The notes beneath the pieces are model-generated. The model saw only the letters and a list, made by a program, of their open reading frames with translations, was not told the DNA's origin and ran no database searches. From Vitrella brassicaformis CCMP3155 (Eukaryota; Protista; Chromerida), in NCBI GenBank assembly GCA_001179505.1, contig CDMY01000603.1, positions 186,001-250,000 on the forward strand: a DNA stretch of 64,000 bases, given 5' to 3'. Below, one piece after another: positions 20,508 to 61,224 of this stretch. The position numbers and the translations under genes were made by a program. The stretch's first letter is position 1. Each line of letters begins with the position of its first letter.

Positions 20508-23500
20508 TTATTCGTCGATCATCTCGACTTCTGTGACGGCCGGTGGTGCGACGGTGGGGTCGGGCGGGTAGCGGAAGAGCCAGTCACGGAACCTCTCCAG
20601 CTCTGCCAGGTGCTCGTCCAGACGAGCCTGCCCGCCCTTGACCAACTCGTTGCCCCGCTGGATCAAACCAGACTGAAGACAGACACACAACATAAACACA
20701 GAGGGGGAGAGCTGGTGCGGGTGAAGGGGCGGGTGGGGGCGAATGTACCTTGGCGCAGAATCTTTGCACGAGTGTGGCGCGGTGGACCCGCATCTCCTCG
20801 TACTCGCGGACAGCCGCCGGCAGGAGGGCGTTCATCTCTGTGAAGCACATCGACATCGCAGCACATCAACTCAGCTAGCTCACCATCAACAGCACAGCAC
20901 AGCAAGGAAAGCCGCCCGCCTCACTCACATAACATACACAAGAGAGAGCGTCCCAGTACCTGCCGACTGGACCTTGTCAGCTCCGATGTCAGCGATGATC
21001 TTGTCGATGGCCGCAGTGAGGCAGTGCACGTCCTGATTGGTCAGATCGACACACCGACCAACACACACAACACGCCGTGTGTGTGTGTGTGTGTGCGACT
21101 CGGTCGCTTGGCTTGCCTCAAAGGTCTGGTTGGCGCCCTGGCCTGGATCAGGGTGGGGGGCGTGCGCAGCGTCACCCAGCAGCACCACACGACCCTACGC
21201 ACACACACGCGCACACACATTGAAAGACAGGTGCAATGCAGACACATCACACAGCAGACACAAGACACAAACAAGGGCATACAGACTTACGGAGGGTGTG
21301 CTCCACTGCTTGAGTGCCTTCCTCGCGTAGATGCCTCTCTGGTAGATGCGGCTGGCGGGGGTGGCCTTGACGCAAGCCACGATGTCGGCCACCTGACGCG
21401 GCACCTCCTCGCCCTTCTCGCCACCCCCTCCAGCTCCAGCAGCACCGCCACCGCCACCGCCACCGCCCCCTCCACCACGTGTGAGGTAGGCGATGACCTC
21501 CTCCTTCAGCCCCGCCGCACCGATCTTGCCGCGGCCGTCGAAGTGCCACGCCTCCACACGCACCTGCACATTGACACACACACAGACATACACACACAGA
21601 CATACATTGTGGTGTGGTGGGGTGGGCTGGGCTGGGATGGGTAACAGACCTGCCAGAAGGTTTGGCCGTGTCCGCATGGGCACATGATGCAGCTGAGCGG
21701 CGGGTCCTCGACGACCAGCTTGACCAGCTCGTGGGGGGCGTGCACCGGCTTGGTGGGGGAAACGATCGACTGCACACACGAAAATTTCGCCACGTGCGAG
21801 TGCGTGTGAGAGTGTGTGTGAGAGTGTGTGTGTCTGTGTCTGTGTCTGTGTGTTGGGGGAGGGGGAGGGGGGGAAGGTGCTCACGGATGTATCGACGATG
21901 GCGTTCCAGTTCTTCTGGCCTGTTGGATGCATTGCATTCGATGGCATGACATGGCTGGGGAGAGAGATGCAAAGCAAAGCAGCGCATACGTACCGAAGAA
22001 TATGGGTGAGTCTTCCTCTGGCGGCAGCCCCGTGATGCGCCTGCGCAGCGTCGAGAAGGCGCCGTCAGCCACCACCACCAAGTGGGCCCTGGTTGAGAGA
22101 CAAGATACACACACGCAACTCACTCACCCTTGACACACAAAACACTGTTTGTGTACTTGCCTGACGGTGTAAGTGTCAGGCTGCCCCTGGAAGCGCACAG
22201 TGACCTCGGCGCCCTCCTCTGTGAAGTCCCGCCCGCCGTGTGAGCAGTGGATGGCCTCCTTCGGACACAGAGACGCCAGGTGGTTCTGATGCACCCACCG
22301 GCCCCAAACGAAGGACACACACATGATGCCAGGCCATGCTGCCCCATCCCATACCCACACACAGGCACAGGCATGGCACCTGAGCGTGTGTCCAGGGGAT
22401 GATGACCGAGGCTGACTGGTACTGCTGCTCGAACAGGCCAAAGTCGCGAGAAGAGGCCGTCTCCTGAAGGAAGGCACAGACACACAACACGCACGAGCAC
22501 AGAGAGGGAAACACAACCAACAGGCGTCTGTCTGTGTGCGTCGGTCGCTCCCTGTGTGTGTGTGTGTGTGTGTTAGACTCACTCACAGCCAGACAGACTG
22601 ACTTACCGTGCCGTCGGCCTTGCGGAGCTTGTGGACGCAGACGGGCTTGGCGCACCCCGACTTCTTGAACATCTCCACCACTTGAGGAATGGCCCTCTCT
22701 AAGGCGCGCATGCCGTTGGGGTAGCAGTGGAACACACCCTGGCCACATACACACACACACAGACAGAAACATACACAGACGCGCACAAAGGTGCAGGTGG
22801 CTCTGGTGTAGGTGGCTTGGGTCGATGGCTTGCTTACCTGCGACTGGTATCTCAGGTCAGGCGCCCTCTCAAACACGTGTGCATCCAGCCCTCGAGACCT
22901 ACACGCAACACACACAAAGACACCCATCCATCCCTCTCCCTCCCTCCCTCCCTCCGACAAGTAAGTAGTACTCTCTATTCACCTGAGGGCCGCCCCGAGA
23001 GCGAGCCCCCCCAGACCGCCCCCAATGATGGCCACCTGCACAAAGGCCGGTGCCTTCACGCCCTCGGGCACCATGACGTGCTGCGAGGGGGCGCTGTAGT
23101 AGTAGTCACTGGGGGCCGCGTCGGTCGATGGCGATGGGGCGGGGTGGTGTGGCTGTAGGTGTGCTGGTGTGGAGGGCTGGGTGGATAGGGGGAGGGAGTG
23201 GAGGTAGCTCAGCACCTCGCTCTCTGACTTCACTTCTGCGTACTTTGCCTGCACGCACACACACACACACACACACACACATGGATGGACACACATAAAG
23301 GACAAAACAGGTGTGGCTTGCCTGCAGATCGAAGAGGCTGGCGTCATGCACCTCCTGCCGCCTATCCCCCACGGCCTCCCGCACCACCACCGGCACAAAG
23401 CCGTGCTGCAGGCAGTCGGTCGCCGTGGCGCGGATGCAGCCACTCGTCGACACGCCACATATGATGAGCGTGTCCACACGGAGGGCACACAGCGAACTCG

Positions 23501-23605
23501 CCAGAGACGTCCCGAAGAAGGCGCTCGCGTAGTTCTTGACAATCACCACCTGTGCACACACACACAGGTGGCAGAGAGGAAGATGCTCACTCACTCAACG
23601 ATGTG

Positions 23606-23638
<33 letters not shown>

Positions 23639-24086
23639 TGCCTACCCACCTCTGTGGGCAGTGGCTGCAGCGCCTGCGGGAACCGTCCCAGAGGGTTGCC
23701 CTTGACGAAGCACTTGAGAGCGGGCACCTTTCGGAAGAACAGTCCGCCACTCACGCCCCTGTCGTCATACTCACTACAACGTACACACAAACGTACACAA
23801 AAGACAACCGCCATTCATTGCACTGCACTGCTTGCCTCTCTCTCTCCGGCCATGGCTTGGCTGCCTACACAGTGGTGTGGAAGACCGGCACGCCCGCCGC
23901 CCTGGCCTCCCTCAGCAGCCGCTGGCACGAGTCCAGGGCCCGCTCGGCGAGCGCCCCGGCGTACAGCGGCGATGAGGGCAGCAGGTACGCTTCCACAAAG
24001 TCGACGATGAGCAGCGCCGGACGGCTGCCCACAGGCAGATGCCCGTCGAACGCGCCCTTGTAGTTGGCTGTCAGCTCGGTGGACAT
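20508..24086 (-). CDS. Fusion: isochorismatase-family amidohydrolase (NicF / N-carbamoylsarcosine amidase-like) plus class A FAD-dependent monooxygenase
   Basis: N-part: [48 protein letters not shown], with the Asp-Lys-Cys triad intact. C-part: [46 protein letters not shown]. The junction lies within one exon (23248-22984). Confidence 0.88.
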
Positions 24087-24189
24087 CGTGATGGCGGGAA
24101 TGTGGCAGATCTGCTGCAAGCTGAGCTCGCAGGCGAAGGGGTCAATCTCTTCTCTCAGATCTGCGTCGTCTGACTCATCGATCTTGAAG

Positions 24190-24643
24190 ATGGCCGGTTG
24201 CTTTAGTCGCCTCAGGTGGTTCCCACAACATCTCTCACCATCGTCTTCCAGGGCCATCAAAGTCCCGCCACCACTGCATCGACATGCCAACAGGTTTCTC
24301 GCCACGGCAGCAGCAGCAGCACCATCAGCATCAGCAGTTGATTCATCATCACTACCACCACAAGCAGCAGGACCACAGACACAGACAGCAGCATCAGCAG
24401 CCCCGCCCCCTCCACCTCCTCCTCAGAGCGACAGTGAGTTCCTTCCCCGGCTGCGCAACATCGGCATCTTTGCGCACATCGATGCGGGCAAGACGACCAC
24501 CACCGAGAGCATCCTCTACAACGCCCAGGTCATCCACACCAGAGGGGCGGTGGACGAGGGCACCGCCGTCATGGACTTCATGGAACAGGTAACAGGCCAC
24601 TCAGAGTGGCACTCACAACACGGCAACACGTCCCCCTCTCTCT

Positions 24644-24675
<32 letters not shown>

Positions 24676-24762
24676 CTGTATTGGATATACAGGAGCGTGC
24701 GCACGGCATCACGATTCAGTCGGCGGCCACGACGTTCATCTGGCAGGACTGCAAGATCAACC

Positions 24763-24793
<31 letters not shown>

Positions 24794-25450
24794 GGCAGAG
24801 GTCGCCCGTGCTGTCCGTGTGCTCGACGGGGCGGTGGTGGTGCTCGACGGCCAGCGGGGGGTGGAGCCGCAGACGGAGAACGTCTGGCGACAGGCCAGCG
24901 AGGCCATGCTGCCGAGGGTGCTCTTTGTCAATAAGATGGACAAACCCGACGCCAACCTGGTTTGTCGAGGGGGTGGGGGGCTTGATGCCTGTGGTTGTAG
25001 TTGTGATTGAGATGTCACGGTGGCGGTGTGTTCGTGTGTTCGGTCAGGAGTACAGCGTGTCGAGTGTGTCGAGCCGGTTTGGGTGCAGGCCTGTGGTGCT
25101 GGTGGCGTCGGTGCCATTCGACAGTGGCCCTGTCGATGCGCTCGTCGACCTGTTCGACTTTCAGGTAGCCAGCCACCCACACACAGGACAGGACCTTCCT
25201 TCTCTGTGGTGTGATGTATGTCTGTCTGTCTGTCTGTCTGTCACACAGGCGTACCGTTATGAGGCCACAGGGGTGCTGAATCGCACCAGGAGGGCGGACA
25301 CACCATTGCCCAAGCAGTGGGACACCTCACAGCAGATTCCAGACGCACTGGCGCCATTCAAGATCACACAAATAGCGCTGCAGGTGAGATGAGAGAGTGG
25401 GCGAGAGGGAGAGACACTGAGCGGGGGCTCATATCCTCACCTGTGTGTGT

Positions 25451-25483
<33 letters not shown>

Positions 25484-28400
25484 AGAGTTTAGCGTCTGGT
25501 GGATCAGAGGGTTGAGCTGCTGGAGACGGTTGCGGACCTCGATGACGAGTTCGCTGAGCTATACCTCATGTATGTGTCTGTGGATGCATCGACACACCGC
25601 ACAGACAGATGCGCCGCCATACTTGCAGGGGGCTCTCTCTCTGTCTCTCTCTCTGTCTGTCTCTGTGTGTGTGCCAATGAGTGCAGGAGTGACAGCTCCC
25701 CGCCCCGCGAGAAGTTCGACCAGGCCGTCAGACGTATCACGCTCAAGCACAAAGGTCGGCTACCATCGCCACCCCCCCACCCATCCCTCCCTCCTTCCCT
25801 CCCTCCCTCCCTCCCTCCCTCCTCAGGTGTGCCTGTGTACTGCGGTTCTGCCTTACGCGACTGGGGTGTGGATCTGCTGCTCAACGGGGTGGTGACGTGC
25901 CTGCCCTCCCCTTTGGACAGGACGCCCCCCCGTGTGCGGCCGTACAATCCCACCACACACCTCAGTGTGTCGGGGGAGAGGGACAGGGACAAGGACAACA
26001 GGCTCAAGGTCAAGGGGCTGGTCAGCGCGCTGCCGACGTGTATTGGGAATGACCAACGGGTACGTGCCTGCCTCAAGTGGGGGTAATAAGGGGCGGTTGA
26101 GGGAGGATTCCTCAGTGCGTGTGTGTGTGTGGGGGCACGTGTGTGTGTCAGGTGTTGGTGCAGACGAACGTGAGTCCCTGTGCGCTGGCCTTCAAGGTCA
26201 TGTCGGACAAGAAGGGCGGACAGCTGGTCTTCTGCAGGGTCTACTCGGGTCTGTCAGTCAGTCCCACCATCGATCCCAGCCCCCCACACGCCTACGGAGA
26301 TCCTCCCTCCCTCCCTCCCTCCCTCCCTGCCCTCTTCGTAGGTGTGTTACGTGAGCGACAGCACCTGTACAACGCCACTCGCGGCGTCAAGGAGGCCATC
26401 ACACGCATCTTCAGGGCACATGCCGACCGCTTCGACAAGACCAACGCTCTCGCCGCAGGTAGGGTAGGGTAACCAATCAACACCTGCATCCACCCATGGA
26501 TATATGGATGGACACGCCCAGCTGGCCACACGTGGAGTGGATGGATGTCTGTGGCGTATGTGTGTGTGTGTGTGTCATCAGGCGACATCGGCGTGTTGCA
26601 GGGCTGCCGGCAGACGCTCACGGGCGATACTCTGCACGCCCTGACGAAGCCGGTGGAGCAGTCCTTCTATGTGCTGGAGCACACAGGCACCGAGTGGGAC
26701 CCACAGCCCGTCGCCTTTGCCGCTTTTGAGACCGAAAACGGTTGGTTTGTGGGCTGGGTGGGATGTGCGTGTGGGTTGGTGAATTTATGGGTGCAGTAAG
26801 TAGCGGTGGCGGATGGTCCTTGTGTGTGTGTGTGTGTGTGTGTGTGTAGCCAAGGATGAGGAGAGGCTGCAGGTGGCGCTGAGGGAGCTGACGCTGGAGG
26901 ACCCTTCTCTCCAGTTCCATACCGACGTGCAGACCGGTCGGTCAGTGAATATGCGAAGAGACGCAGAGTGACAGACATGGTGTGGTGTGTGGTTGTGGTT
27001 GTGGTTGTGGTTGCGTGTTTAGGTCAGTATCTGATGTGGGGCTTGGGTGAGCTGCACCTGCAAATCGTCAAGGAAAGGCTCGTGGCCGACTGCGGTACGG
27101 GACAGGCAGGAATGGCATGCCGCATGAGTGAGTGCATCCTCCCCTCCATTATGTGTGTCTATGTGTGTGTGTGTTGCTTGCTTCATCCACACACACATAC
27201 ACACACATACACACACCACACAGGTCTGAGCGTCAAGATGGGCAAGGTGGAAGTGGGATACAAGGCAAGCAGCCATCCATCCATCCATCCATACGGCTCT
27301 TCCTCTCTCTCTCTCCCTCTCTCTCTCAGGAGTATTTGGAGGAACCGGCGAGTGGCTCGCTGGTCGACCAGCTCACACAAGGAAGTACGACACTCCCACA
27401 CCCACACCCACAGGAAGAGAGAGAGGCGCATCGCATCCACACAGCAGCCAGGTTTTGTGCATCCGCCCATCAATCAGACCGGGCCGCGTCAGTGGAGATC
27501 AGCCTGCGTCTGGAGCCGCTGCCCCTGCCGGACCCCTATGAACTCAGGGAACCACCAACCTCCACCTCTCCCTCTCCCTCTCCCTCTCCCTCTGACGACA
27601 CCACATCCACACAGGCATCATCGGCTGATGAACATGGTGCAGACGTGGCGGCCGAGATAAGCATGGCCCCACTGAGCGAGGCTGCATACGCCAGCCAAGT
27701 GGGCACGCACAGAGAGAGAGACAGAGAGAGAGATCGGGGCCTGGTGGCTGGTATGTTGAATGGTGTGTCTTTAGGTGAGTGTGGAGGTGAGCCCGCTGTC
27801 GCGCGAATCGCTCATCGACGTCCCCGGCGACGCGCTGGAAGGTGATTGACTGACGGGATGGGATGGATGTGTCAATGTGTGTGATGGGAACGCACCCCAT
27901 CTGCCCCTGGTGTGTACTGCAGCTGCCGAGAAGACGTTGAGCGATGCGCTGAGCTCGGGGCCTCTCCTGGGATACCCAATGGTGTCACTGCAGGTATGTA
28001 GCAGACACACCCAGACACACACATGGGGTGCTGTCTTGGGATGCATGCCATGCAGCCGTGGGTGTGTGTGTGTGGAGTGTAGGCGACGGTCGATTCCATC
28101 AAGTGGAACCAGTTCTCCACCATTGGAGGTGAGATGACACACAAGACGCTGCTGCACCATCTCACCTCTGCTTGCTGTCGCTGCTGGCTGTGTGGCAGCG
28201 GTTCGTTCGTGTGCCGCCAAGCTGTTCCGGAGCCTGGTCAAGGGCCGGTCGGTGAGCCTGCTGGAGCCCCTGATGAAGGTCGAGGTGGTCACACCCGACA
28301 CACACCTCGGCAGCATCCTCTCAGAACTGGTATGCACGTACGTGTCATGACGCCGATTCTGATGCACACGGAGAGCGAAAAGCGCTGTGTGTGTGTGCGG

Positions 28401-29235
28401 TTGCGGGATGGATGGATGGATCTGGGGTTCAGACGAGCTTCCGCCGAGGTCACATCGTGTCGGTCTCGACGTATGAGGACCCCCTGGCGAGCAGGAAGAC
28501 CACCACGACCGCCTCCTCGTCGCGATCGGACGCTGTGAGGCTGTCCAAAATCAATGCTGTGGTACGGTACGGTGCCGCACGCCAGCCAGCCATCCAGACA
28601 GACAGACACGCCGACGGATGGATGGATGGATGGGTACAGGTGCCCCTGAGCACGCTTGAGGGCTATTCAGCGGTGCTCCGGTCCAACAGCCGCGGGACTG
28701 CCCACTTCACCATGACCCCCCACGGCTACGCTCCAGTGCCCGAAGACCTAGAGGAGCAGGCACGTACCCCTCCCCTACCCTCTGCCCCCCGAACAAACCT
28801 CACCACACAGACCTACCTTCATTCTGTCTGTCTGTCCGTGCACCGCGATGCAGATCCTGACTGAGGCACGTGGGCTGCGCAGCTTGGGTCTCCCGTCAGA
28901 GAGGGAGAGGGAGAGGGAGGAGGCTGCAGAAGAAGGAGAGGAGGGAGAGGAGGGAGAGGGTAAGGTTGAGGAGGGGATGGTGTACCTGGAGGGCGAGGAG
29001 CACGGCACCGTCATCGTCGAGGAGGACGAGCAGCTCAAGTGGTCCTCAAAGGCGCTACACCAGGACACTCACCCAGGTAGGGTACACAGACAGACAGACG
29101 CGCAGAAATGCTAGCTGCCACTGCAGCCGGACGTGTGTGTACCTGACCTGCGATTGTCTGTGCCTCGTCTCTCATGCAGAGCGGACGGAGGGCCATGGAA
29201 AGGCGCACGGACGGTCATCGGAGAGAAAGCTCTGA
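24190..29235 (+). CDS. GFM2: Mitochondrial elongation factor G2 / ribosome-releasing factor 2
   Basis: [54 protein letters not shown]...[36 protein letters not shown]. Arg/Ser/Ala-rich presequence-like N-terminus. EF-G2 rather than EF-G1 is judged from motif resemblance. Confidence 0.85.
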
Positions 29236-29693
29236 TATATCGATGTCTATCGTGATCGAATAGATAGATAGATGGACCGACCGGCGCCGCATTTTCGTCG
29301 TGTGTGTAGTGTAGTGTGTCTTGCAAGGCAGCCGGGCCAGCTGCTTAGGCAGCTCGATAGGTCAGACAGGATGGCAGTAGCTAGTTGTGCCGCCATGTTA
29401 TCTATTGGTCATGCAGTTAGCCGTGTTTGGTCTTATGTCTCTCTGCCGGTATACAGACATATATCGGTCAGGACAGCGGCGGCAGCCAGGCAGGAAGGAT
29501 CTGTTGTGTGTTTCTTGCGTGCGTGTATGTGACGCAGCAAGCAATGTCTGTATAGTAGCGAGTGCCTCAGGTGCGATCGCAACCATCCATCGGCCAAGAC
29601 GAGCAACCGAGACGGATGATCTGCAGTGCATGCAGACGGGGGGCGTCCTCAACGCCCCCACCCAAAATACACTCCGTTGCTCGGCGCGACACG

Positions 29694-30490: not shown

Positions 30491-31123
30491 CAGACAAGAT
30501 GACCACACCCATCCATCACACCAGATCCATCCAGCTTTTGATGTACGTGTTGAGAGAGAGGAACCTGACTGGCATACACAGCACAGCACAGCGCGGCCAT
30601 TGCTGCATCCACATGGCTTGAGTGAGACATGTATGTCGATCGCACCGCACCAGACCTGAGTGAATGAATGATCCAAGGTCCGTATCACACGACACGGCTG
30701 ACACAGCACGACTCTACAACACACAACACACAAGACACAACACGCGTCGACTAAATGCGAGGAAAGGTCACCTGCTCGACTCGCTTCCTTGGCTGTCTGT
30801 CTGTCTGTCTGTCTTTCTGTCTATTTGATAAACAACACATGGATGCGCAAAAAACACGACACAAAAACCCGAGAAGGCAGGCAGGCAGGCGGCACACACT
30901 GCTCGCTGTCCTTTGCCAGGACGCGACGCGCAACCGCCACCCAGCCATCCATCCACCCATCCATCCATCCATCCATCTTGACAAATGACACACTCGACAC
31001 ACACACACTCGACACTTGTCATGTCACTCACACACAGACATCTCATAGCACTGCACACACATCACGTATCTAATTACGCAACCATGGCTAGGCTACCTGG
31101 CATCGATCACACCACACTTGCTG

Positions 31124-37937: not shown

Positions 37938-37973
<36 letters not shown>

Positions 37974-43542: not shown

Positions 43543-43802
43543 CGCTCCCTCGCCGATGAAATGGATCAGAACGGTTCCGTAATACTGCAAAAACACCTGT
43601 TTGTGCCAAAGGATTTCCTACCTCATGCGAGCTCAAGCTTGCAGCGACAGAACGATTCGTGACTCTGAGATCTGATCTTGAGAGATTGCGCAGTCCTGGA
43701 CTGCGCCAGTGGATGCTCTTGCGTCACACGAGAGCACCAGCCACAGCCACAAACGTTCCACCACCACATCTCCGCCTGACCCGCCCGCGTCAGATCTGCC
43801 TC

Positions 43803-46800
43803 ATGGCGACCACAAACGGCACCGCCCCCGCACCCACAGCCACCGCCAGCAGCTCCACAGGCGGCCACAGCTTCGCCCGCCGTGACAAGCTTCTCAGCAT
43901 CGAGAAGTCGGTCCAGCAGCTCTGGCAGGAGGGCGACGTCTACACCGAGAGTGCCCCGCCGGAGCCGTGGAGCGACCAGAAGAACGAGGAGAAGTTCTTC
44001 GTGACATTCCCTTACCCGTACATGAATGGCCGTCTGCATCTCGGCCACGCCTTCTCGCTCACCAAGGCGGAGTTCCAGGCACGGTTCCAGCGGACTCAGG
44101 GCAAGAGGGTGCTGTGGCCATTCGGATTCCACTGCACAGGTACGTGACGTGACGTGACGGCAGGAACAGCATGACATGGGTGGCGGGCTCACTGATGAAT
44201 GAATGGTTCGCTCTATGCTATGTGTGTGCGAGTGGGTCCTTTCAGGCATGCCAATCGCGGCGTGTGCGGACAAGCTTAAGCGTGAGATCGTTGAGATGGC
44301 TGCAGAGAGGGAGGGGGCGAAGGAAAACGACTGCGAGCAGACCAACGGAGCGGCCGCAGCAGCAGCAGCAGCACCCGCGCCAGAGACCACCACTGATGGC
44401 GACCTGACCAAGTTCAAGGGCAAGAAGTCCAAAGCCGCCTCCAAGGCGGGCAAGGCGGTGCGTACACACACACGGAAACGGACACCCACGCACACAGAGA
44501 AAGAAGCACTTGCTGGTCATTGATGGGTTAATTCCATGATATTATGTGTGTGTGTGTGTGCAGAAAGGGCAATGGGAGATCATGGTGTCTATGGGAGTGC
44601 CCGAGAGCGACATCCCTGAGTTCGCCGAGGCGGGGCACTGGCTGCAGTACTTCCCCCCTCTCGCCGTCGAAGATCTCAAGATCTTCGGCATGGTAAATGA
44701 ATGCGCCCATCCATCCATCCGCTGCGTGTCCAGTGTACCGATGTCAACATGTATGTGTGGCGTGTGCTGTCACCTGTTTGAACAGGCCGTCGACTGGCGG
44801 CGGTCGTTCATCACCACTGACGCCAACCCCTACTACGACGCCTTCATCCGGTGGCAGTTCAACAAGCTCAAGGTACCTACCTTAGATCTAACCCTTCTGA
44901 ACAGCACTCATGGTGGATATGTGTGTGTGTGTGTGTGACAGGCCGCGAACAAGATCAAGTATGGCAAGCGCCATTCCATCTTCAGCCGTATCGAGGGCCA
45001 GCCATGCGCCGACCATGACAGGCACGCCACGAAAGCGCAACCACCCACTGACTGTCCCACCCATCCATCCATCCATCCACACACATGACATGCCAGCTGG
45101 TGTGGTTGGTGTGTGCCGCTGTGGTGTGTGCAGGGCGTCTGGTGAGGGTGTGGGCCCCCAAGAGTACACGCTGGTCAAGATGAAGGTCCTGGAGATACCT
45201 GCCGGGTGGAAGGTATGTTTAAACACCACACACACAGCACAGACACACACACAGACACAGACAATCACGGCCTCTCTGTCTGTCTGTCTGTGCTGTGGGT
45301 CGTGTGGTGTCGGGTTGCTGTCTGTGTAGGGTGCTGTGGGTGAGAGGTCGGTATTCCTGGTGGCTGCCACGCTGCGGCCCGAGACCATGTACGGGCAAAC
45401 CAACTGCTTCGTCAAGCCCGAAGGAGAGTAAGCACCAAAGCTTTCCCCTCTCACCCACCCACCAGACCCACACCACACACATGACATGGACGCATCTGTG
45501 TGGTGTGCAGTGACGCCATCTACGGCGCCTACCTGATGAAGTCCGACGAGGTCTTCATCTGCAGCCGCCGGTCCGCCCTCAACATGGCCTACCAGGACAT
45601 CGCCATCCTCGACGACCCCATCCCGCCAGATACCCTTCCCGAGCCTCGCTGCCTCCACACCATGCACGGCAAAGAGCTGATCGGGCTGAAGCTCAGGGCG
45701 CCCCTGGCTGTGTATGACGAGGTCTATGCGCTGCCGATGACCACGATCTCAATGGACAAGGGCACGGGGGTCGTCACGAGTGTGCCGAGTGATGCGCCGG
45801 ACGATTATGCGGCTCTGAAAGACCTGCAGGTGGGGCAGAGGGGGGGGGGGGGGGGGGGGGGGGNNNNNNNNNNNNNNNNNNNNNNNNNNNNNNNNNNNNN
45901 NNNNNNNNNNNNNNNNNNNNNNNNNNNNNNNNNNNNNNNNNNNNNNNNNNNNNNNNNNNNNNNNNNNNNNNNNNNNNNNNNNNNNNNNNNNNNNNNNNNN
46001 NNNNNNNNNNNNNNNNNNNNNNNNNNNNNNNNNNNNNNNNNNNNNNNNNNNNNNNNNNNNNNNNNNNNNNNNNNNNNNNNNNNNNNNNNNNNNNNNNNNN
46101 NNNNNNNNNNNNNNNNNNNNNNNNNNNNNNNNNNNNNNNNNNNNNNNNNNNNNNNNNNNNNNNGAGAGGGCGGAGGGAGGGGGAGAATGGCGAAGTGGAT
46201 GGATGGATGTGTGTGTGTGTGTGTGTGTGTCGTTGGTAGGATAAGCACAACATGCGGAATCACTTTGGTGTGAAAGACGAGTGGTGTGACCCCTTGAGGT
46301 TCAAAGTCGTGCCAATCATCGATATCCCTGGGTGAGGGAGGGAGGGAGTGACCGTGGGCAACACACACACACACACACACACATCCGACGTGACTGACGT
46401 GTGCAGCTATGGCGACCAGGCCGCCGTCAAGCTGTACCACGACAAGAAGATCCAGTCGCAGAAGGACAAAGTCAAGCTCGCGGTCCGTCCCCAGCACACC
46501 ACCGACTCACACCCACCCCACTCATCCATCCACGCCTTTGTGTGTGTGAATGGTATGAGCAATGCAGGAGGCCAAGGAAGAGGTCTACAAGAAGGGCTTT
46601 TACGAGGGCGTCATGTTGGTGGGAAACCATGCCGGCAAGAAGGTCGAGGAGGCGAAGAACCTCGTGAGAAAGGAGCTCATAGACAGGTGGGTGGGCTTCC
46701 CACACACACAGAACAGAACTGATCACCACACACACATCCATCCATCCATCCATCTTTGCCGCCAGTGGTGACGCCGTGCCTTACTTCGAGCCCGAGAAGC

Positions 46801-52576: not shown

Positions 52577-52980
52577 ACACACACACGAGGGACGGGCAAT
52601 GTGTGTGTGGGTGGGTGTGTAGACGAGACCATTGCCTTTGACGTGTATGTGTGTGTGTGCGCGGTGTTGCGTTCCATGGTCGGACCAGCAGTCATTTTCG
52701 TGTCATTTGTACGACGAAGCCACCCTGTGTTGTGTGTCCTCAGCTCATAGATATCATCCTCACAGCCACACAGACCAAACGTACCTCGATATAGACAGCC
52801 AGCCAGCCAGCAACACATGCGCTCATCCCAGAGAAAGAGACGGACCGACGCGCATCCATTTGCAGCACCCAGAGTCCGCGCACGCACGCACCCAGTCACA
52901 AATCACCTTTAAAAAACATCACACATCCAGCCCACCATCAAACCGATTGTGCCATTCAGACGGAGAGAGACAGACAGACG

Positions 52981-53015
<35 letters not shown>

Positions 53016-53145
53016 TCGAGAGCCTCCTGTGTGTGGGCGTGGGCGACGATTGTGTTGTTTTGTGTGAGGGAAAGGAAAGTGGTTGCAGTCACCTGACTAC
53101 TCTACCCGTCCGTCACCCACCCCCGGGCTGGCCGCTACTTGCGCT

Positions 53146-54204
53146 CTAAATAAAATATGACTTCTTCTTGCGTGGGCATCTGCCCTGCTTGTCGTCAAAA
53201 AAGCCCTTCTTGTCGGGGTGGCAGGGCTCACAGTAGCCGTAATTGCTACACATGCACTCCTGGGTGAAGCCTTGTCCCCAAGGGCCAGTGGCTTCATGGT
53301 ATTTGTTGCAAATCCCGCCGATCATCTCGGGAGTGGCCACCCACGCGCCAGTCGCAGGGTCCTTGCGCCCGCACGGCTTCATAGTGAAGGCTTTAGTGGA
53401 CCTGTTGCAGAAATCCGTCGTCGCGCCTGCATCCACACACACCACCCACACCACACACACACACACACATGGCGTTGGATGACTTCCAGGAAGCATAATT
53501 GCATACCGTGGTGCTGCTGCTGCTCTTCATGTCCGTATTCGCCGGTGAGGTGCATCTCGGCCCGCTGGATGGCGGCGAGTGCGGCCTCCTGCATGGTGAG
53601 TGCGGCCTCCCGCATGGTGAGGGAGCTCGTTATCATGCCCTTCAGATCTACCACCTCCTGCTCGATGAGCGTCAGCGCCGTAATTGAACGCACGAATGCA
53701 GGCGGCAAACCATGCAGGGCATTTGTGGGTGCTGTAGGTGGCACATGTACGTGCGGGCCTCATATATCTGCCCCTCACGCACGTAAGTACCTTCGCTGGC
53801 CTGGATCTCCTGAGTGCGGCCGAGAAACGACGCACCTGCACAAACAGAGGAAGCCAGAGAAACATGCCATCCATGGATCATTCCCGTTCGTGATAGATCT
53901 CGCCGCTCCATGGACCATTCACGTCAACGCCGCAGTCCTTCCCCTCCTCGCAGTCGGGGCCATAGCTCCCCTCGCCCACCCACATCTCTGTGGGCACACA
54001 TCAGTCATTCATCAGTCATGCGGCCATCCATATGCACAAAAGAGGACCGAACTCACGCAGTATGGGCAGATCAGTCATGGTGGATGGTTGGTTCGGCGCC
54101 TGTGTGTCCCCCCTCTGCTTACGTCGGTCAGAGTTGCGCTGGGCTGCCACAGCGGCCAGGCCGACCACCAGGATGACGAGGCTGAAACAACGCGTCATCA
54201 TCAT
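53146..54204 (-). CDS. Putative secreted protein with coiled-coil segment and Cys-rich C-terminal domain
   Basis: Signal peptide MTRCFSLVILVVGLAAVAA. Heptad-like ITALTLIEQEVVDLKGMITSSLTMREAAL. The last exon (53146-~53430) has 8 Cys. Middle exons are uncertain. Confidence 0.55.
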
Positions 54205-55443
54205 CGCGGCCCAGCAAATCGCAGACGATGTGCTCACTCGGCGACTAAGAGGCGCGAGAGATTTCGCCGGAACTCGGGCGGCGGGAAAACAGGGGCCGAC
54301 GCATGCATTTTGATCGGATCGCACCAATCACATTTGACGTCCCCAGATCGATTGCTGTGTGTCTGGGATAGAGCAGCAGGGATCCGCGTGTGACATGTGT
54401 GCGTCTGGCAGTGCGACGAAAAGGGCGCGCAGATTTGGCCAGCCCGGCGTCCTGGCCGTTCAGATTCACTTCGCCTGTCGTCCTGCCATATCTGTCTGCG
54501 CAACACGCGGGAGTGAGTACCTTCGCTACGGCTCCACACGGCAGCCTCCTGGCGGGATGCTGCATAGAACAAGAGAATGGACAGGAGTTTCATGGTGATC
54601 TACCCATCTGTGGGGTGTGTGTGTTGTCGCCCACCCTGAGCAAGCCCGTCAGCCAGCAACGCGAGGGACAGAAGCGACGAAACCATACGCAGCGCCATAA
54701 TGTATTCGCTCGCGAGGGTCCCCGACACCCTCCGCAAAACCGCTGTGCAATATCCTGGCCGGCCACACCACGCCAGGGGATGAGGGGTCTGTCGTCCTCC
54801 ACTGTTATTAAACACACTGTGGCAGCCGCACACGGTGTGGCCAGGGGGGAGGGGACGTGACCGGCAGATTCACGTCCCTGTCTCTGCCGTTCACGTCCCT
54901 GTCCCTTCTTTGCTTTTTTCTCTAGTGGCAGTGGCAGCGCTTAGGCGCCGCCATGCAGCAAGTCGCTCGCTGGTGAGTGTCAACTAAGTCATCACAGCGG
55001 AGACCACGCGCAAAAAACTCTCTGTTCTGTGCAGGAGCGGGCACGACGAGCCGCGTTTGGGCGGTGCACTCCAGTTTTCAGATGGAGGCGGCAGTCTGCA
55101 TGGTCAGACCGAATGACTGCATTATTTATGGCACTCACTCACTGATCCGTTCCGTGTCGCGTGTGTTCTTCTTCCACACCATGCAGCACATGGACTCACA
55201 CACAACACAAGTGTATGTCGTAGTGAGTGAGAAGGAGCCATGCAGACAGGACAGGGGCACACTTGGTGACCCACACGCCACGGCCACCAAGGCAGTGGGG
55301 TCAGACGAGAACCAGCGGCCCATATCGATACAGACACACACAGAATGAATGGCACACGAAAAACTGTGAGTGACTTCCTCTCTGCCAACTCTCTTCAAGA
55401 CACACACAGACAGACAAAGCTCTCGCTTAAACGATCAAGGAAC

Positions 55444-55743
55444 NNNNNNNNNNNNNNNNNNNNNNNNNNNNNNNNNNNNNNNNNNNNNNNNNNNNNNNNN
55501 NNNNNNNNNNNNNNNNNNNNNNNNNNNNNNNNNNNNNNNNNNNNNNNNNNNNNNNNNNNNNNNNNNNNNNNNNNNNNNNNNNNNNNNNNNNNNNNNNNNN
55601 NNNNNNNNNNNNNNNNNNNNNNNNNNNNNNNNNNNNNNNNNNNNNNNNNNNNNNNNNNNNNNNNNNNNNNNNNNNNNNNNNNNNNNNNNNNNNNNNNNNN
55701 NNNNNNNNNNNNNNNNNNNNNNNNNNNNNNNNNNNNNNNNNNN
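55444..55743. other. Assembly gap (300 N) followed by a poly-C tract
   Basis: N run. Confidence 0.99.
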
Positions 55744-55800
55744 CCCCCCCCCCCCCCCCCAACACACACACGAAATCTCTGCCGGCCAACACTCGTTAGT

Positions 55801-58800
55801 TCACTGTTTGGCGGCCTCGTCGCCACCGTCGTCTTCGGCCAGGTCATTGAGGCTGGGCTGCCCCTCAGTGTCGGGGAACTTGTTGATCCACCCCTTGAAC
55901 GACACCAGCAGCTCGCTGAGCTTCTTTCCTGACACGCGACGACCCTCACGCTCGGCGTCGCCCACCTGACACACACACACACACACACACACGATGTTTC
56001 AACGGTGGGTGTGGGGGACAGTGAGAGAAAGACGTTACCATGGTAGAGAACTGCTGGACGACGGACGCCCTGGGCACACGGACCTTCTCGTAGGCAGCCA
56101 CGGCGTCGGGCAGCCGATGCAGCCACGTGCCGTCACCACCTGCGGTGCACACAGACACACACACACACACACACACACATGACGCTTGATCGACGATTCA
56201 GTGCACGGCAGTAGGCAATACCGTGTTTCTCTCTCAGTTTGCCGATTTCGTCCACCAGCACGGCGACGTCCTCAAACACCTGGTTGGCCCCCTGCCCGGC
56301 CAATGGGTGCGGCGCGTGGGCCGAATCGCCCAGCAGCACCACACGACCCTGCACACACACACACACACAGAGGCATCCTTGCGCCACTCTGCCATTCTGC
56401 GTGTCTGAGCGGCTTGTTCACCCTGGGCGAGCTCCACTTGTCGATGGCGTCTCGCGAGAACATGTGCCGCTCGAAGATCTGCTCCTCAGGCGTGGCACTG
56501 ATGGCCGCCATGATGTCGCTGTGCTTGCTGCTGTAGTCCGCTCCACCAGTGCCGTCAAGCCGGCCCGTCTTGACGTAGTTGAGGAGCCGCTGCCGCACCC
56601 CCTGACGGCCAATGGCGCTGCGGCCGGGGCGGGAGGCATCGGGGGCGGGGAGGCGCAGCTGCGCACAACACACACATGCAGATAGATAGATGCCCCCACA
56701 CACACAGAGAGGGAGGGAGATACATCCATCCGTGTGACGAAGAGGGCAGAGGGGCGTGTGGGGCGTACGTACGAGCCAAAAGGTGAGACCCGAGCCGGCG
56801 TCGACAAGGAATGCCGAGAGGAAGGGTGTGTTGCTGTCGACCTTGACCACCTCATGGTCGCCATGCACCCTCTCACCAACGCTCTGATCACACACACACA
56901 CGCGCGCCCACGTAGATCTTTGTCTCTTTCGTAGCTCTCCTCTCTCTCTCTCTGTCCACCGCGTGGCTGACCTCAGTGGGGATCATGGCATTGTATGAGA
57001 TGTTCTTGTAGTAGTGCGGCGGGTCCTGCACAAGCACCGACGCCGCAAACGGGTTCAGGCCGCCACCTTTGCCCCCAGCCGCCGCCATCTCCTCAGGGGT
57101 GCTCGCAGCCGTCTGCTGCTGCTGCTGCTGGCTGCGCGATTGCGCCACGATGTGCGGGCGGAGAGCTGAGAAGGAGCCGTCAGCTGCGACCACTAGAGAC
57201 GCCCTGTAAGGTAGCCGCCGCACCACCACACACAAGACAAGACAAGACAAGACACACATGGAGTGTTTTGTGAGTGAATGGTGTGCTGGATGTTGAGGGT
57301 CGGATCATGGTGTGTGTGATGTCCTTACTTGACGTGGTAGTCGTCGGGCCGTCCTTCGAAGAGCATACACACGTCCTCTTCGGTCTCGGTCCATCCGCGG
57401 GCGCCATGGCCGCAGTGCACCACATCCGACGGCACGTGAGACGCGAAGGTGTTCTGAGCGGCTGTCCACCGCATCATGACACACGGGGCGCCGAACTTGT
57501 CGACGTACTGATCGCGCTTCAACGCAGTGCGCGTCTCCTGACCAACACAGCCACCACAGCCGGAAAGGGGCATGTGCGTGGGGGGCATGTGCGTGGGGGG
57601 TGGGGTTGTTTATGCTTACCGGCAATTCGTCTTTGCGTACGACCAGCTGTGAGGAGGGGCAGAAAACGCCGGTCTGCTCGAACTCGTCGGCGATGTCGCG
57701 GTAGGCCATGCGGATGGCCTTGATGCCGTTGGCGTCGGCCATGAAGATACCCTGGCAGGGTGTGGTACACACAACACACACACACACACACACGCACGCA
57801 CGCACACGCACACATAGCAGACAGACATCCACGCCGACGTGCAAGGATGGTAGGATGGTGTGATTTGTTCGTTTCGTGCCTGTGATGCATTTCTCAACGC
57901 AGGTGCGCGCTCAAACACATGGGCATCGATACCGCGCTTCCTATAATCGGCAAACACCACACCACACACACAATGCACTGCAGTGCAGCCACATCCACCC
58001 CTATTATGCTCAGTTTCTCACCTGAGTGCGGCGCACAGCAGGAGCCCCCCCAGTCCCCCGCCAGCGATGGCCACCTGCACCCTCTCGGGGATGCGCCGGC
58101 CGCTCTCCACATCGCGGCCGCTCTCACCCCACTGCCGGCTCACTGACCTGAGACGCAAATCATCAGGAATGGACGTCTCGCACGCCTAAAACATGAAAGA
58201 AGGAGAGAGAGAGAGGGGGGGAGGGAGGGAGGGATGGATGAGTGTGTCGGCCTGTGTGTGAAGGGAAGTGAATGTGGGCGTCTGTCGTCGGGTGACTGAC
58301 CTTGAGTATGGCGGGAAGCGACCACTCCACCGCCTGTGTGGGCTGGGCGATCTCTTTCTCGGCAGCCGAGCTGCCGCACGCGTGACTGAGGGCCTCGTCG
58401 AGCACAGCCCCCAATTGGCGGGGGACGGGCAGCCAGTCGCCCTCACCCACGGATGCGCTGTCGCCCTCCCGCTGCTGCTGCGACATGTAGACGGTCACTT
58501 CCCTGCAGACACACCACCACCTGGGTCTGTCTGAGTGTCTGTGCGGTGTCTGTGTGTGTCGGTGTGCTGACTGTGGCAGAGATGCGGTTGATGTCAAGAA
58601 GGCCTGCTCGGTGTGGGCGGGGTCGAGAGCGACGGCGCCGCCGCACGATGACAGAAATCCCTGAAGCATGAAGACGACGACAGACACACGTATTTATTGC
58701 GGGGTGCTGTGCTGTGCTGTGCTGTGTCTGTGTTGTGTGTGCGGCTCGCCGGACCTTCAGGAGCGCCTCGGCAACATATGGGCAGCGATGCAGACTGATC

Positions 58801-61224
58801 AGGCAGGGTGAGAGAACACACCCACCGCACATTTGGTGATAACAGCATGTGACTCACCCTCCCACTCACCCACCTCTCCGCGTCTGCCCCCTTCTGCGAA
58901 GGGATGACAGCGAATATATCCAGCCGCTGGATGACAGGCTCACCCGTCAGAGCATCAACCTCCACCTGACACACACCACACCACACACAGGATGATGATG
59001 ACACACAGCAAAATGCAAGCAATGTGCCCATCCATCCCATTCATCCGCAGACGGACCATCCATCCACGACTCACCTACCTCTGCGGCAGCAGCCACGTCA
59101 CGCCCTGCCATCTGTGCCGACTTGACAGCCACGCCCCTCTTGCGCCACCGGTTGTCACCGTTGTGCTTGTCAACCGCCGCACACCGGTCGCCCCATCCTA
59201 TAGAAGCCTTCAGCCGCTCAACCGCCGCACCCTCAGCGCACCCCGCTGCCATCGCCACAGAGCCGCCAAGCTTGGCACCGGTGAGTGAGATCTGCTGCCA
59301 TTGGTGGCCTTGTTGCTGTGCCATGATGGAGATCGACGGGAGGGGCGGTGTGGGGGTGAGTGAGAGGGATGGCAGGACGGCGGTGATGAATCGTGGGGAG
59401 GGGGCGGCGAGGTGTGTGTCGTCGTAGGAGCCGCGGGAGACCTCCCCGCCCAGCAGCACCAGGAACTTGAACAGCAGCGCCTGAGTGCCGCTGGGGACCT
59501 GACCGCTCATCTGACATCCATCCCAGTAGCAGGCCACACACACATCATTCAATCACATCCATCCATCCATCCACCACACCTGACCTGTGCGTTGGCGATC
59601 TTCAGCGCTTCCCATGCAGTCTCCTCGGTCAGCCCATACCCCTGCAGGAACTCCTCCACCCGCCCGAGCCGCCCCATCCCACCCTCCCAGCTCGCACACA
59701 CCCGCACTTCACGCAGCTGCCGCGTCACCGCATCCAATGCTGCCCAGCAACACACGCTGCCCACCGGCCGCCCCGTCCGCACCGGCGATGCCGTTCTGTA
59801 GGCACGATAGAGCGACTGTGCGGCGTCGATCGGCTCTGGCAGCGGCAGGGTGACCGACACGAGCAGGTAGTCGCTCCATTTGATGGTCTTGTTGTTGGGG
59901 TAGCCGATTCGGTCGAGGAAGGCCTCGATGGGCAGGGATGTCGGCTGTGGCTGTGGGTGTTGCTGCTCGCCGGATGACGACAGGTCGGCTGTGGTGTAGA
60001 ACTGCACGGATGCCTGCCATGTGACGAGAGCGGGAAGCAGGTCGGCGGCCGCGCCGCCCCTGCTGGACCCGCTCAGCTCACGCAGCACAGCACCGCCCAC
60101 CGTAAGCACGTTCCTCAGACCTCTCGGGGCAACCACACGCAGATGGTCCGCCAGTGCGTCGAAGTGCGATGCCTTCATGTCGGCCCGGTCGTGCCGCTCG
60201 ATCGTGTCCATCACCTGCTGCAGCACCACCGACGCGCCGAAGGTGACGTGAGTCGTCTGCGAGTCGATGCCGCGCATGGCCGGCAGGTCGCCCACGGCAA
60301 TGCGCGCCTGGCTTTCGGTGAGTGAGGTGTGGTCGAACGTGCTGCTGCCGTAGAGCAGCTCGAATGAAGGGGCCGGGGTGGCGGATAGAGTGGCCTGCAG
60401 CTGCTGCATCGATGTGGGCAGGTGGACGAACGCCGGCAGGTGCTGCAGCGATGAGGATGGCGGGATGGGCGTGGGCGTGGGGCGGAGTAGTGTTTCGATG
60501 AGCGAGAGGGGCGCCTTGGTCTTGTCGGCGATGTCCTTGGCCAGAAAGGAGGTGTCGAGGGTCGCGAGAAACGACAGCGCCTTGCACAGATCCGTCGCAT
60601 CTGAGCGATAGATACGTCAACGAACGCATGCATCACGTTATGCCATGCATCCCTCCCACTACCTCCCACTCCACTACCTGACTCACCATCTCTGTCGCAC
60701 GGCACACTCGCCACCCAGTCGCGCATCGCCTCGCTGTCCATCAGCCCCTCAGCAGACGAAGCGCCACCGCTCACCAGCACCCCCGCCGCACCCACAGCAA
60801 CGGCCGCACCGACACCGCCCCATTTCTCGGCCATGGTCTGCAGCTCCGCGGGCAGGTGCTGCAGCGTGGTGATGGTGGCGCCCTGCACGGCCACTGCGGA
60901 CACCAGTCGTGTGTAAGTGGGTGTGGGAGGGGTGGTCCATCCGCCGTGAAGTCGGTCGGGGAACGACACAAGCGCCGCGAAACACTCAAACTCTGCAGCG
61001 GCAGCAGCAGCGGCAGCAGCAGAGGGACAGACAGACAGACATGCATCATCGGCACGTTGCATGCGTTTGTGTGAGTGGCAGTTATTCCACCCACCTGTGC
61101 GGCCTGTGTGTTGCAGGACATCCAGGAGCGACGCGTTGGGGTCGATGCCGGCAGAGGGGATGCGCGCCGTCTGCCCGTCCAGCTGGTACACCAGCGGACT
61201 CATCTCGCCAGTGCCGTCAGCCAT
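55801..61224 (-). CDS. Fusion: degenerate, internally deleted xanthine dehydrogenase/aldehyde oxidase-like region plus class A FAD-dependent monooxygenase
   Basis: XDH-like traces: LVYQLDG...IDPNASLLDVL, GLRNVLTVGG...DLLPALV, ALLFKFLVLL, AVDKHNGDNRWRKRGVAV, AAEVEVDALTGE...RLDI, SASVGEG. Monooxygenase: VAIAGGGLGG, VFERAP, VVAADGSFS, VLLGDSAHAPHPLAGQGANQ. Joined by the phase-0 intron 58300-58186. Confidence 0.8.

What the first reader, a model, noticed from the sequence alone, without database searches (positions are those of the whole stretch)
20508..61224. Two paralogous monooxygenases 32 kb apart, each fused to a different N-heterocycle-catabolism-type partner
Seen: the two monooxygenase domains share motifs and intron positions (after AALR, after SQ and before G, and just before GRVVLLGD), so they are paralogues. 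One carries a NicF-like amidase and the other an XDH-family remnant. Established: XDH-family hydroxylase, FAD monooxygenase and amidase are the first, second and late steps of nicotinate breakdown in Pseudomonas (NicAB/NicC/NicF), and similar enzyme types occur in the Aspergillus hxn cluster. Inference: a fusion-based pyridine/purine-ring catabolic module in a photosynthetic alveolate. Caveat: the XDH part cannot be catalytic as written, and the substrate is unproven.
Basis: inference. Interest (0 to 1): 0.75.

Follow-up and report, generated by a model that had tools for sequence, protein, structure and literature searches.

The report
Paralogous flavin monooxygenases with different fused partners
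Two related oxygen-adding enzymes in the alga Vitrella brassicaformis are each fused to a different partner, a working amide-splitting enzyme in one and a decayed molybdenum enzyme in the other; they hint at an uncharacterised breakdown route for ring compounds, but it is not the bacterial nicotinate pathway.

Summary
Both genes lie on the minus strand of a Vitrella brassicaformis contig. Gene A runs 24086->20508 (16 exons, 721 aa). Gene B runs 61224->55801 (16 exons, 1238 aa by my model; public model CEM25789.1, 1281 aa). Their class A flavin monooxygenase (FMO) domains are 41% identical. In each gene one exon encodes the end of the partner domain and the FMO's FAD-binding start, so the fusions are real. 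Neither assembly gap touches a coding sequence.

New context: A and B belong to a clade found at four places in the genome. The others, on contig C227, are FMOs fused to a complete XDH-family molybdenum enzyme, and B is a decayed copy of that fusion.

A's amidase keeps its catalytic Asp-Lys-Cys. In a tree it groups with bacterial hydrolases from hydantoinase operons, next to a NicF clade.

The nicotinate/purine module reading is only partly supported. No NicX homologue was found, uricase is present, the FMOs are no closer to NicC than to other bacterial FMOs, and unrelated genes separate A and B. The scan had already noted the C227 fusion elsewhere.

The parts
20508..24086 (-). Gene A: amidohydrolase-FMO fusion, 16 exons, 721 aa. 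Exons, high to low coordinate: 24086-23869, 23773-23650, 23549-23322, 23248-22983, 22898-22838, 22738-22607, 22463-22380, 22285-22161, 22088-21994, 21919-21885, 21769-21650, 21563-21291, 21194-21117, 21032-20960, 20837-20749, 20672-20508.
   Evidence: Frames read. Phases, splice sites and in-frame closure checked.
23190..24086 (-). Isochorismatase-family cysteine amidohydrolase domain of A (exons 1-3 and the start of exon 4). Catalytic Asp29, Lys119 and Cys152 are present.
   Evidence: Pfam PF00857 7.3e-19. PDB matches to N-carbamoylsarcosine amidase, maleamate amidase Ami and NicF, 5.7e-22 to 1.3e-16. Triad invariant in an alignment with 12 bacterial homologues.
22983..23248 (-). Junction exon A4. 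One open frame holds the last helix of the hydrolase (AKYAEV...), a Pro/Ser/Thr-rich linker and the FMO's GGGLGG start. It is reached through a GC-AG intron (23321-23249).
   Evidence: Across the splice the sequence aligns without a gap to bacterial homologues (...LFDLQ|AKYAEV...; tblastn reaches residue 206-209).
20508..23050 (-). Class A FMO domain of A, with GxGxxG, DG and GD motifs intact.
   Evidence: PF01494 match to exon 13.
55801..61224 (-). Gene B: decayed XDH-family part plus FMO, 16 exons, 1238 aa (public model CEM25789.1, 1281 aa). Exons: 61224-61095, 60992-60687, 60600-59585, 59510-59079, 58965-58874, 58502-58301, 58185-58022, 57940-57880, 57751-57620, 57537-57329, 57203-56972, 56883-56773, 56658-56422, 56348-56222, 56139-56039, 55965-55801.
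58100..61224 (-). XDH-family remnant of B: an Fe-S region without its cysteines, a FAD_binding_5-like domain, and three short leftovers of the molybdenum-cofactor domains.
   Evidence: Pfam PF00941 1.4e-13. Aligns to the intact paralogue P0003 at 11-543/13-575 (27%), 582-615/1035-1068 and 624-800/1220-1439. P0003 residues 576-1034 and 1069-1219 have no counterpart.
58022..58185 (-). Junction exon B7: XDH C-terminal tail (ACETS...), linker and the FMO's GGGLGG start in one frame. The intron before it is at the same place as in the intact C227 gene.
55801..58100 (-). Class A FMO domain of B, motifs intact.
   Evidence: Pfam PF01494 5.3e-14 on P0001.
55444..55743 (.). Assembly gap, 58 nt downstream of B's stop codon; outside the coding sequence.
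45864..46163 (.). Assembly gap between the two genes. It affects only the stated distance.

Best explanation
Shown: A and B belong to a clade of class A flavin monooxygenases found at four places in the Vitrella brassicaformis genome. Members share eight intron positions.

The other members, on contig C227, carry a complete XDH-family molybdenum hydroxylase in front of the FMO. They are one complete gene and a second copy interrupted by an assembly gap.

B descends from that fusion. It keeps the same intron positions in the XDH part, but it has lost most of the molybdenum-cofactor domains and the Fe-S ligands. Only its FMO can still be catalytic.

In A the same kind of FMO follows a complete amidohydrolase with an intact Asp-Lys-Cys triad. 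This domain belongs to the N-carbamoylsarcosine-amidase/NicF branch of the isochorismatase family.

Inferred: fusions usually join enzymes of one pathway. This FMO clade therefore probably hydroxylates, or oxidatively opens, a small aromatic or N-heteroaromatic acid.
- In the C227 enzymes that step would be coupled to a water-derived hydroxylation by the molybdenum centre.
- In A it would be coupled to release of ammonia from an amide or carbamoyl group.

The substrate is unknown. It is probably not xanthine or urate, and the route is not the Pseudomonas nicotinate pathway. Whether A, B and the C227 genes serve one pathway or have diverged is open.
For: - Exon models close in frame and the junction exons span both domains.
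- The public model of B is a single protein.
- A complete XDH-family-FMO protein, P0003, shows all XDH Pfam domains plus PF01494. It maps on C227 together with a second, gap-interrupted copy.
- Only four loci in the genome match this clade's exons.
- The clade has 93/99 support against bacterial FMOs.
- Intron sites are shared across A, B and C227. The XDH-part exon sizes and the junction intron of B match those of P0003.
- Decay of B's XDH part is documented.
- A's triad is intact.
- The hydrolase tree places A with hydantoinase-operon hydrolases (99/95), sister to nic-cluster NicF (100/98). The best hits worldwide lie in HMGL-like / CoA-transferase / hydantoinase A-B / hydrolase clusters.
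Against: - No expression or enzyme data could be reached.
- The fusion in A depends on a GC-AG intron. Homology across the junction supports it, but no transcript was seen.
- I could not retrieve the public model of gene A.
- The FMO clade is only 23-28% identical to any bacterial FMO examined, so homology gives no substrate.
- B's long open XDH remnant could be a gene on its way to loss. Long open frames are common in this GC-rich DNA.
- The branching order of A, B and C227 is unresolved.
Confidence: 0.6

Rival explanations
1. One reading: A and B together form a nicotinate- or purine-type catabolic module, equivalent to NicAB/NicC/NicF or the fungal hxn genes, built from fusions.
For: - The partner families match those of the nic and hxn pathways (PMC5746545, PMC9304392).
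- A motif scan of bacterial genomes with the FMO landed on genuine nic clusters. Each held a NicF 38-42% identical to A's hydrolase.
- 17 of 35 bacterial loci holding a homologue of A's hydrolase are nic clusters.
- Intact molybdenum hydroxylase-FMO fusions exist on C227.
Against: - No NicX/Peptidase_M29 homologue in the genome.
- The wider test shows NicC is no closer to the Vitrella FMOs than other bacterial FMOs are.
- NicC His211 is absent in all three Vitrella FMOs. Tyr215 is kept only in the C227 copy.
- The hydrolase falls outside the NicF clade.
- Uricase is present.
- The intact paralogue has Ala at the Glu802 site, which XDH and HxnS keep.
- B's XDH part is dead.
- A and B are about 32 kb apart with unrelated genes between them.
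Confidence: 0.15
2. The paralogues have diverged and share no pathway. A works in a hydantoin/lactam-type or other amide-releasing route. The C227 genes work elsewhere. B is a decaying duplicate whose FMO may or may not still function.
For: - Pairwise FMO identity is only about 40%.
- A's hydrolase groups with hydantoinase-operon enzymes.
- More distant FMOs are fused to yet another partner, an alpha/beta hydrolase (P0004-P0009). This suggests these FMOs fuse readily.
- B's XDH part is 27% identical to P0003, against 40-44% for its FMO. That is consistent with relaxed constraint.
Against: - B's FMO motifs and its whole 3.7 kb reading frame are intact.
- The same narrow clade is joined to two partner types that both occur in N-heterocycle catabolism.
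Confidence: 0.3
3. The fusions are gene-model artefacts: neighbouring genes wrongly joined.
For: The A3/A4 junction uses a non-canonical GC donor. A Met lies 12 residues before the FMO's first strand in exon A4, so a separate FMO start is conceivable.
Against: - Exon A4 carries the hydrolase's conserved last helix in the same frame as the FMO start, with no stop between them.
- Exon B7 has no Met before the GxGxxG motif and begins with the XDH tail.
- The public annotation models B and the C227 gene as single proteins. It also uses a GC donor in B.
Confidence: 0.05

Closest known systems
NicC / HxnX, 6-hydroxynicotinate 3-monooxygenase (PDB 5eow; PMC9304392)
   Same: Class A FAD monooxygenase fold and motifs. 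It is among the best PDB matches to B's FMO (1.3e-10). In bacteria NicC is encoded beside a NicF amidase related to A's partner domain.
   Different: Only 24-28% identity to NicC from real nic clusters. In that alignment His211 is not kept, and Tyr215 is kept only in the C227 copy. The Vitrella clade lies outside both NicC clades in the tree. Tropone 2-monooxygenase and HpxO score higher.
NicF / Ami maleamate amidohydrolase and N-carbamoylsarcosine amidase (PDB 3uao, 4l07, 1nba, 26st)
   Same: Same branch of the isochorismatase family. Asp-Lys-Cys triad kept. 44-57% identity to bacterial members.
   Different: A's domain is fused to an FMO. In the tree it sits with hydrolases from hydantoinase A/B-CoA-transferase operons, not inside the nic-cluster clade. 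The substrate is untested.
Eukaryotic xanthine dehydrogenase / aldehyde oxidase, and the intact Vitrella fusions CEL95367.1 and CEL95372.1
   Same: B's N-terminal 760 residues follow the XDH domain order and keep a FAD_binding_5 match. They share intron sites with CEL95367.1.
   Different: B lacks the a/b-hammerhead, most of both molybdenum-cofactor domains and the Fe-S cysteines. Even the intact paralogue differs from XDH and HxnS: Ala at the Glu802 site, Arg880 kept.
HpxO, FAD-dependent urate hydroxylase (PDB 3rp6; NCBIfam NF033623)
   Same: Second-best PDB match (1.4e-11). Pairing it with an XDH would make consecutive purine-catabolism steps.
   Different: Scores 74.8 bits against a cut-off of 500. 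The genome has a canonical uricase. The fused molybdenum enzyme lacks the Glu needed for xanthine turnover.

Membership tests
Class A flavoprotein monooxygenase (Pfam PF01494) | Profile match, plus the GxGxxG, DG and GD-(x)n-GQG motifs in order. | tested here: met
   P0001 5.3e-14. Motifs read in A and B.
NicC (6-hydroxynicotinate 3-monooxygenase) | Substrate-binding His211/Tyr215 pair (PMC9304392). | tested here: not met
   Aligned to NicC from a verified nic cluster, the His site holds Pro, Phe and Asn in A, B and C227. The Tyr site holds Ile, Phe and Tyr. The alignment is at 25% identity, so it is uncertain.
NicC (6-hydroxynicotinate 3-monooxygenase) | Groups with NicC rather than with other FMOs. 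| tested here: not met
   Tree: the Vitrella clade is separate from both NicC clades. tblastn scores to non-nic FMOs (84 and 77 bits) equal or exceed those to NicC (76 and 67 bits).
NicC (6-hydroxynicotinate 3-monooxygenase) | The rest of the maleamate pathway is present (NicX dioxygenase, maleate isomerase). | tested here: not met
   PF02073 gives no match in the genome, while its controls ring. PF17645 gives no match, but its control was silent, so that result says nothing.
HpxO urate hydroxylase | NCBIfam equivalog score above the cut-off. | tested here: not met
   74.8 bits against 500.
NicF maleamate amidohydrolase | Asp-Lys-Cys catalytic triad of the cysteine-hydrolase fold. | tested here: met
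   Asp29, Lys119 and Cys152 are invariant with 12 bacterial homologues.
NicF maleamate amidohydrolase | Membership of the clade encoded in nic clusters. | tested here: not met
   A groups with three hydantoinase-operon hydrolases (99/95). That group is sister to a NicF clade (100/98). The sample was Pseudomonadota only.
N-carbamoylsarcosine amidase | Closest solved relatives, and an operon with N-methylhydantoinase A/B. | tested here: inconclusive
   The best PDB matches are N-carbamoylsarcosine amidases. The nearest bacterial relatives follow hydantoinase A/B genes. Those operons also hold a CoA-transferase and an HMGL-like lyase, which is not the creatinine pathway.
Xanthine dehydrogenase / aldehyde oxidase (N-terminal part of B) | Two 2Fe-2S sites (8 Cys), the FAD domain, and the a/b-hammerhead with both molybdenum-cofactor domains. 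| tested here: not met
   Only FAD_binding_5 is detected. 6-7 of the 8 Cys are lost, and P0003 residues 576-1034 and 1069-1219 have no counterpart. It is a remnant, not a member in function.

The most novel reading that the evidence does not exclude
Gene A could be a self-contained ring-opening and deamidating enzyme. Its FMO would cleave a hydroxypyridine-type ring oxygenatively, as 2-methyl-3-hydroxypyridine-5-carboxylate oxygenase does. The fused NicF/CSHase-type domain would then hydrolyse the resulting open-chain amide. Together with the C227 molybdenum hydroxylase-FMO fusions, this would be a NicX-independent eukaryotic route for breaking down pyridine-type rings.
Probability: 0.1. Interest if true: 0.75.

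Novelty: new variant of a known kind. Interest (0 to 1): 0.45.

Why it matters
One narrow FMO clade is joined in the same genome to a working molybdenum hydroxylase, to the decayed shell of one, and to a working amidase. Such fusions are among the strongest sequence-only clues that enzymes act together. These point to an uncharacterised catabolic or salvage route for small aromatic or nitrogen-containing rings in a photosynthetic relative of apicomplexan parasites. They also give four concrete proteins to express and assay. Gene B shows how a large cofactor-rich domain erodes while its fusion partner stays intact. The value is moderate. All the domain families are well known, the substrate is unknown, and the specific nicotinate analogy does not hold.

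Tried and rejected
- Nic-cluster lead. A motif scan of bacterial genomes with the FMO hit nine Burkholderiales loci. All proved to be true nic clusters with NicC, a maleate-isomerase-like gene, an alpha/beta hydrolase, NicX (1.5e-121 to PDB 7cn3) and NicF (2.8e-92 to 3ot4). A 401-genome sample and full-length scoring then showed that NicC is no closer to the Vitrella FMOs than FMOs without nic context. The scan had keyed on one eight-residue Rossmann-region motif.
- Urate hydroxylase reading. Rejected on the NCBIfam score, the presence of uricase and the loss of the Glu802 equivalent.
- A second FMO/isochorismatase pair on contig C209. No similarity to A or B.
- The look-up of encoding contigs is blank for this genome.
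- The ESM Atlas look-up gave only generic FAD_binding_3 clusters.
- Literature searches found nothing on these fusions.
- I could not retrieve the public protein model of gene A. The word search takes only proteins of 0.55-1.75 times the query length, and no stop-free reference of suitable length exists.
- No joined exon model was handed to any search tool. Pfam, NCBIfam, PDB and the protein databases were searched exon by exon by reference. Joined translations of A and B were built only inside local scripts, from window coordinates, for alignments, tblastn and trees against sequences already fetched.
- Two rows in the trees (L016, L066) were badly trimmed by my script and should be ignored.


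Full report
**Source and gaps.** The window is contig C603:186001-250000 of a 72.7 Mb, 1064-contig genome. Exact look-up of a protein encoded here identifies it as Vitrella brassicaformis CCMP3155. The window has five runs of N. Of the two inside the finding, 45864-46163 lies between the two genes. The other, 55444-55743, starts 58 nt after gene B's stop codon. Neither interrupts a coding sequence. Both lie between A's start and B's stop, so the ~32 kb distance is an estimate.

**Gene models.** I read both loci on the minus strand in three frames. I fixed exon borders at AG acceptors and GT donors, or in four cases GC donors, and checked the arithmetic.
- Gene A (24086->20508) has 16 exons and closes in frame at 721 aa.
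- Gene B (61224->55801) has 16 exons and closes at 1238 aa.
- A search of 1.84 billion representative proteins with B's largest exon returned two proteins. One is the public model of B (CEM25789.1, 1281 aa).
- My model equals that protein except for 43 residues at the exon 5/6 junction.
- The public model also uses the GC donor after exon B8: its invariant stretch N841-F847 runs across that junction. GC-AG introns are therefore accepted in this genome's annotation.

- A tblastn of gene A's open frames against the window hits only gene B's FMO exons.
- The aligned FMO domains are 41% identical over about 430 residues.
- B's FMO part has nine introns.
- The ninth has the same phase but sits a few residues away in a loop of variable length. 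A has three further introns.
- With about 1400 possible sites, eight exact coincidences cannot be chance (inference).

**Both fusions are real at the sequence level.**
- Exon A4 (23248-22983) encodes, in one open frame, the last helix of the hydrolase, a Pro/Ser/Thr linker and the FMO's GGGLGG strand.
- Across the GC-AG splice that precedes A4, the protein aligns without a gap to bacterial hydrolases (...LFDLQ|AKYAEV...).
- Exon B7 (58185-58022) likewise holds the XDH C-terminal tail, a linker and GGGLGG, with no Met before the motif.

**New context: a clade found at four places, with intact molybdenum-enzyme fusions.**
- The second hit, and its cluster mate CEL95367.1 (P0003, 1925 aa), are Vitrella proteins. 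P0003 has every XDH-family domain (Fer2, Fer2_2, FAD_binding_5, CO_deh_flav_C, a/b hammerhead, MoCoBD_1 and MoCoBD_2) followed by a full FAD_binding_3 domain.
- They map as two tandem copies on contig C227. The second copy is cut by an assembly gap. Its tail probably continues at the start of contig C219.
- Exon-level searches of the whole genome find this FMO type only at A, B, C227 and C219.
- The C227 FMO shares the same intron sites.
- The three Vitrella FMOs form a clade (93/99) apart from 15 bacterial FMOs. The order within the clade is unresolved.
- So the shared introns mark the clade, not an exclusive A-B relationship.

**B is a decayed copy of that fusion.**
- Its N-terminal part aligns to P0003 at 11-543/13-575 (27% identity), 582-615/1035-1068 and 624-800/1220-1439. 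P0003 residues 576-1034 and 1069-1219 have no counterpart.
- The genomic space between exons B3 and B7 (1.4 kb) is too small to hide the missing residues.
- Six or seven of the eight Fe-S cysteines are replaced.
- Exon sizes at the N-terminus match (B 43/102/339 aa, P0003 55/110/344 aa). The intron before the junction exon is at the same place (...ILK|ACETS against ...IQQ|ACGTT). This shows common descent.
- The XDH part is less conserved than the FMO (27% against 40-44%), as expected if only the FMO is under strong constraint.

**The intact paralogue is not a typical XDH.** It has GGKA where XDH has GGKE (Glu802), but it keeps the Arg880 equivalent. PMC5746545 states that both residues are conserved in XDH and in the fungal nicotinate hydroxylase HxnS, and that neither is conserved in aldehyde oxidases. 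The pocket is therefore neither xanthine-type nor HxnS-type.

**The amidase of A.**
- Exon A3 matches solved N-carbamoylsarcosine amidases (5.7e-22, 5e-15), maleamate amidase Ami (3e-17) and NicF (1.3e-16). Exon A1 matches only the carbamoylsarcosine amidases.
- Asp29, Lys119 and Cys152 are invariant with bacterial homologues, so the domain looks active.
- In 401 Pseudomonadota genomes, 38 have a homologue.
- I examined 35 loci with flanks. Seventeen are nic clusters, seven follow hydantoinase A/B genes, and eleven have neither context.
- In a maximum-likelihood tree, A groups with three hydantoinase-linked hydrolases (99/95). That group is sister to a clade of eight nic-cluster NicF sequences (100/98).
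- A database-wide search finds thousands of stand-alone bacterial proteins 70-80% identical to exon A3. Sources variously name them maleamate amidohydrolase, nicotinamidase-related amidase or N-carbamoylsarcosine amidohydrolase.
- Two of the three best hits whose neighbourhoods I read lie in an HMGL-like / CoA-transferase III / hydantoinase A / hydantoinase B / hydrolase / GntR cluster. The third has the same set without the hydantoinase genes.
- 'NicF-like' is fair at family level, but A is not inside the NicF clade. Either way, its relatives work in ring-nitrogen catabolism.

**The FMO gives no substrate.**
- Best solved matches to B are tropone 2-monooxygenase (3.7e-18), HpxO (1.4e-11) and NicC (1.3e-10).
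- All NCBIfam matches are far below their cut-offs.
- A motif scan first landed on nine real nic clusters.
- Identity to those NicCs is only 24-28%. NicC's His211 is not kept (residues from PMC9304392).
- With full-length scoring, FMOs without any nic context score as well or better. The tree keeps the Vitrella clade separate.

**Pathway inventory.**
- No Peptidase_M29/NicX match in the genome, with positive controls ringing.
- No Amdase/maleate-isomerase match, but the control was silent, so this says nothing.
- A canonical uricase is present on C385.
- No nic- or hydantoinase-type gene lies in the window apart from A and B.
- The stretch between A and B holds other genes, such as an elongation-factor-G-like reading frame.

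**Verdict.**
- Fusion logic ties this FMO clade both to a molybdenum hydroxylase and to an amide hydrolase. That fits catabolism of an aromatic or N-heterocyclic acid.
- The specific nicotinate and purine analogies fail the tests I could run.
- B contributes only an FMO.
- Nothing shows that A and B act in one pathway.
I reached it independently through.

**Method note.** Exons were searched by reference. Joined translations were assembled only inside local scripts, from coordinates.

Noticed in passing
G000 contig C227:314884-322429 and 330992-336689 (loci L001, L002, L006, L007); contig C219:37-2296 (L003): Two tandem genes, about 90% identical, encode a complete XDH-family molybdenum enzyme fused to a class A FMO. 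The second copy is cut by an assembly gap at C227:330640-330939. The start of contig C219 matches it at the same identities, so it probably carries its missing tail.
   Followed up: partly
P0003 (CEL95367.1), residues about 847-856 and 950-960: The intact fused molybdenum enzyme has Ala at the bovine Glu802 position but keeps the Arg880 equivalent. That pocket fits neither typical XDH/HxnS nor typical aldehyde oxidases.
   Followed up: partly
L119 and L120 (Actinomycetota), L054 and L059 (Pseudomonadota): A conserved bacterial cluster of HMGL-like lyase, CoA-transferase III, hydantoinase A, hydantoinase B, an isochorismatase-family hydrolase and a GntR regulator. It looks like an uncharacterised lactam or imide degradation route ending in a CoA-ester lyase.
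   Followed up: partly
P0004-P0009 (about 705-718 aa; metagenome and genome sources): Proteins joining an Abhydrolase_3 domain to a FAD_binding_3 monooxygenase. They are the only long relatives of B's FMO found outside Vitrella, and they show a third kind of hydrolase-FMO fusion.
   Followed up: no
window donors at 23321, 22160, 21116 (gene A) and 57879 (gene B): Four of the 30 introns in the two genes use GC-AG instead of GT-AG. Three of the donors read GCAAG.
   Followed up: partly
window 58874-58502 (exon B5/B6 junction): The public model CEM25789.1 carries 43 extra residues here. A donor 2 nt into an Arg codon gives a shorter model that follows XDH homology better.
   Followed up: partly
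G000 contig C209:8446-9111 and 14878-15048: A FAD_binding_3 match and an isochorismatase match lie 6 kb apart on the same strand. Neither resembles gene A's domains, so this is probably coincidence.
   Followed up: partly
G000 contig C603:263860-264675, about 14 kb beyond the window end: Another class A FMO gene on the same contig. It is not a member of the A/B clade.
   Followed up: partly
G000 contig C456:316777-322465: A canonical XDH-family gene, 43-62% identical to P0003, with no FMO behind it. It is probably the housekeeping xanthine dehydrogenase.
   Followed up: no
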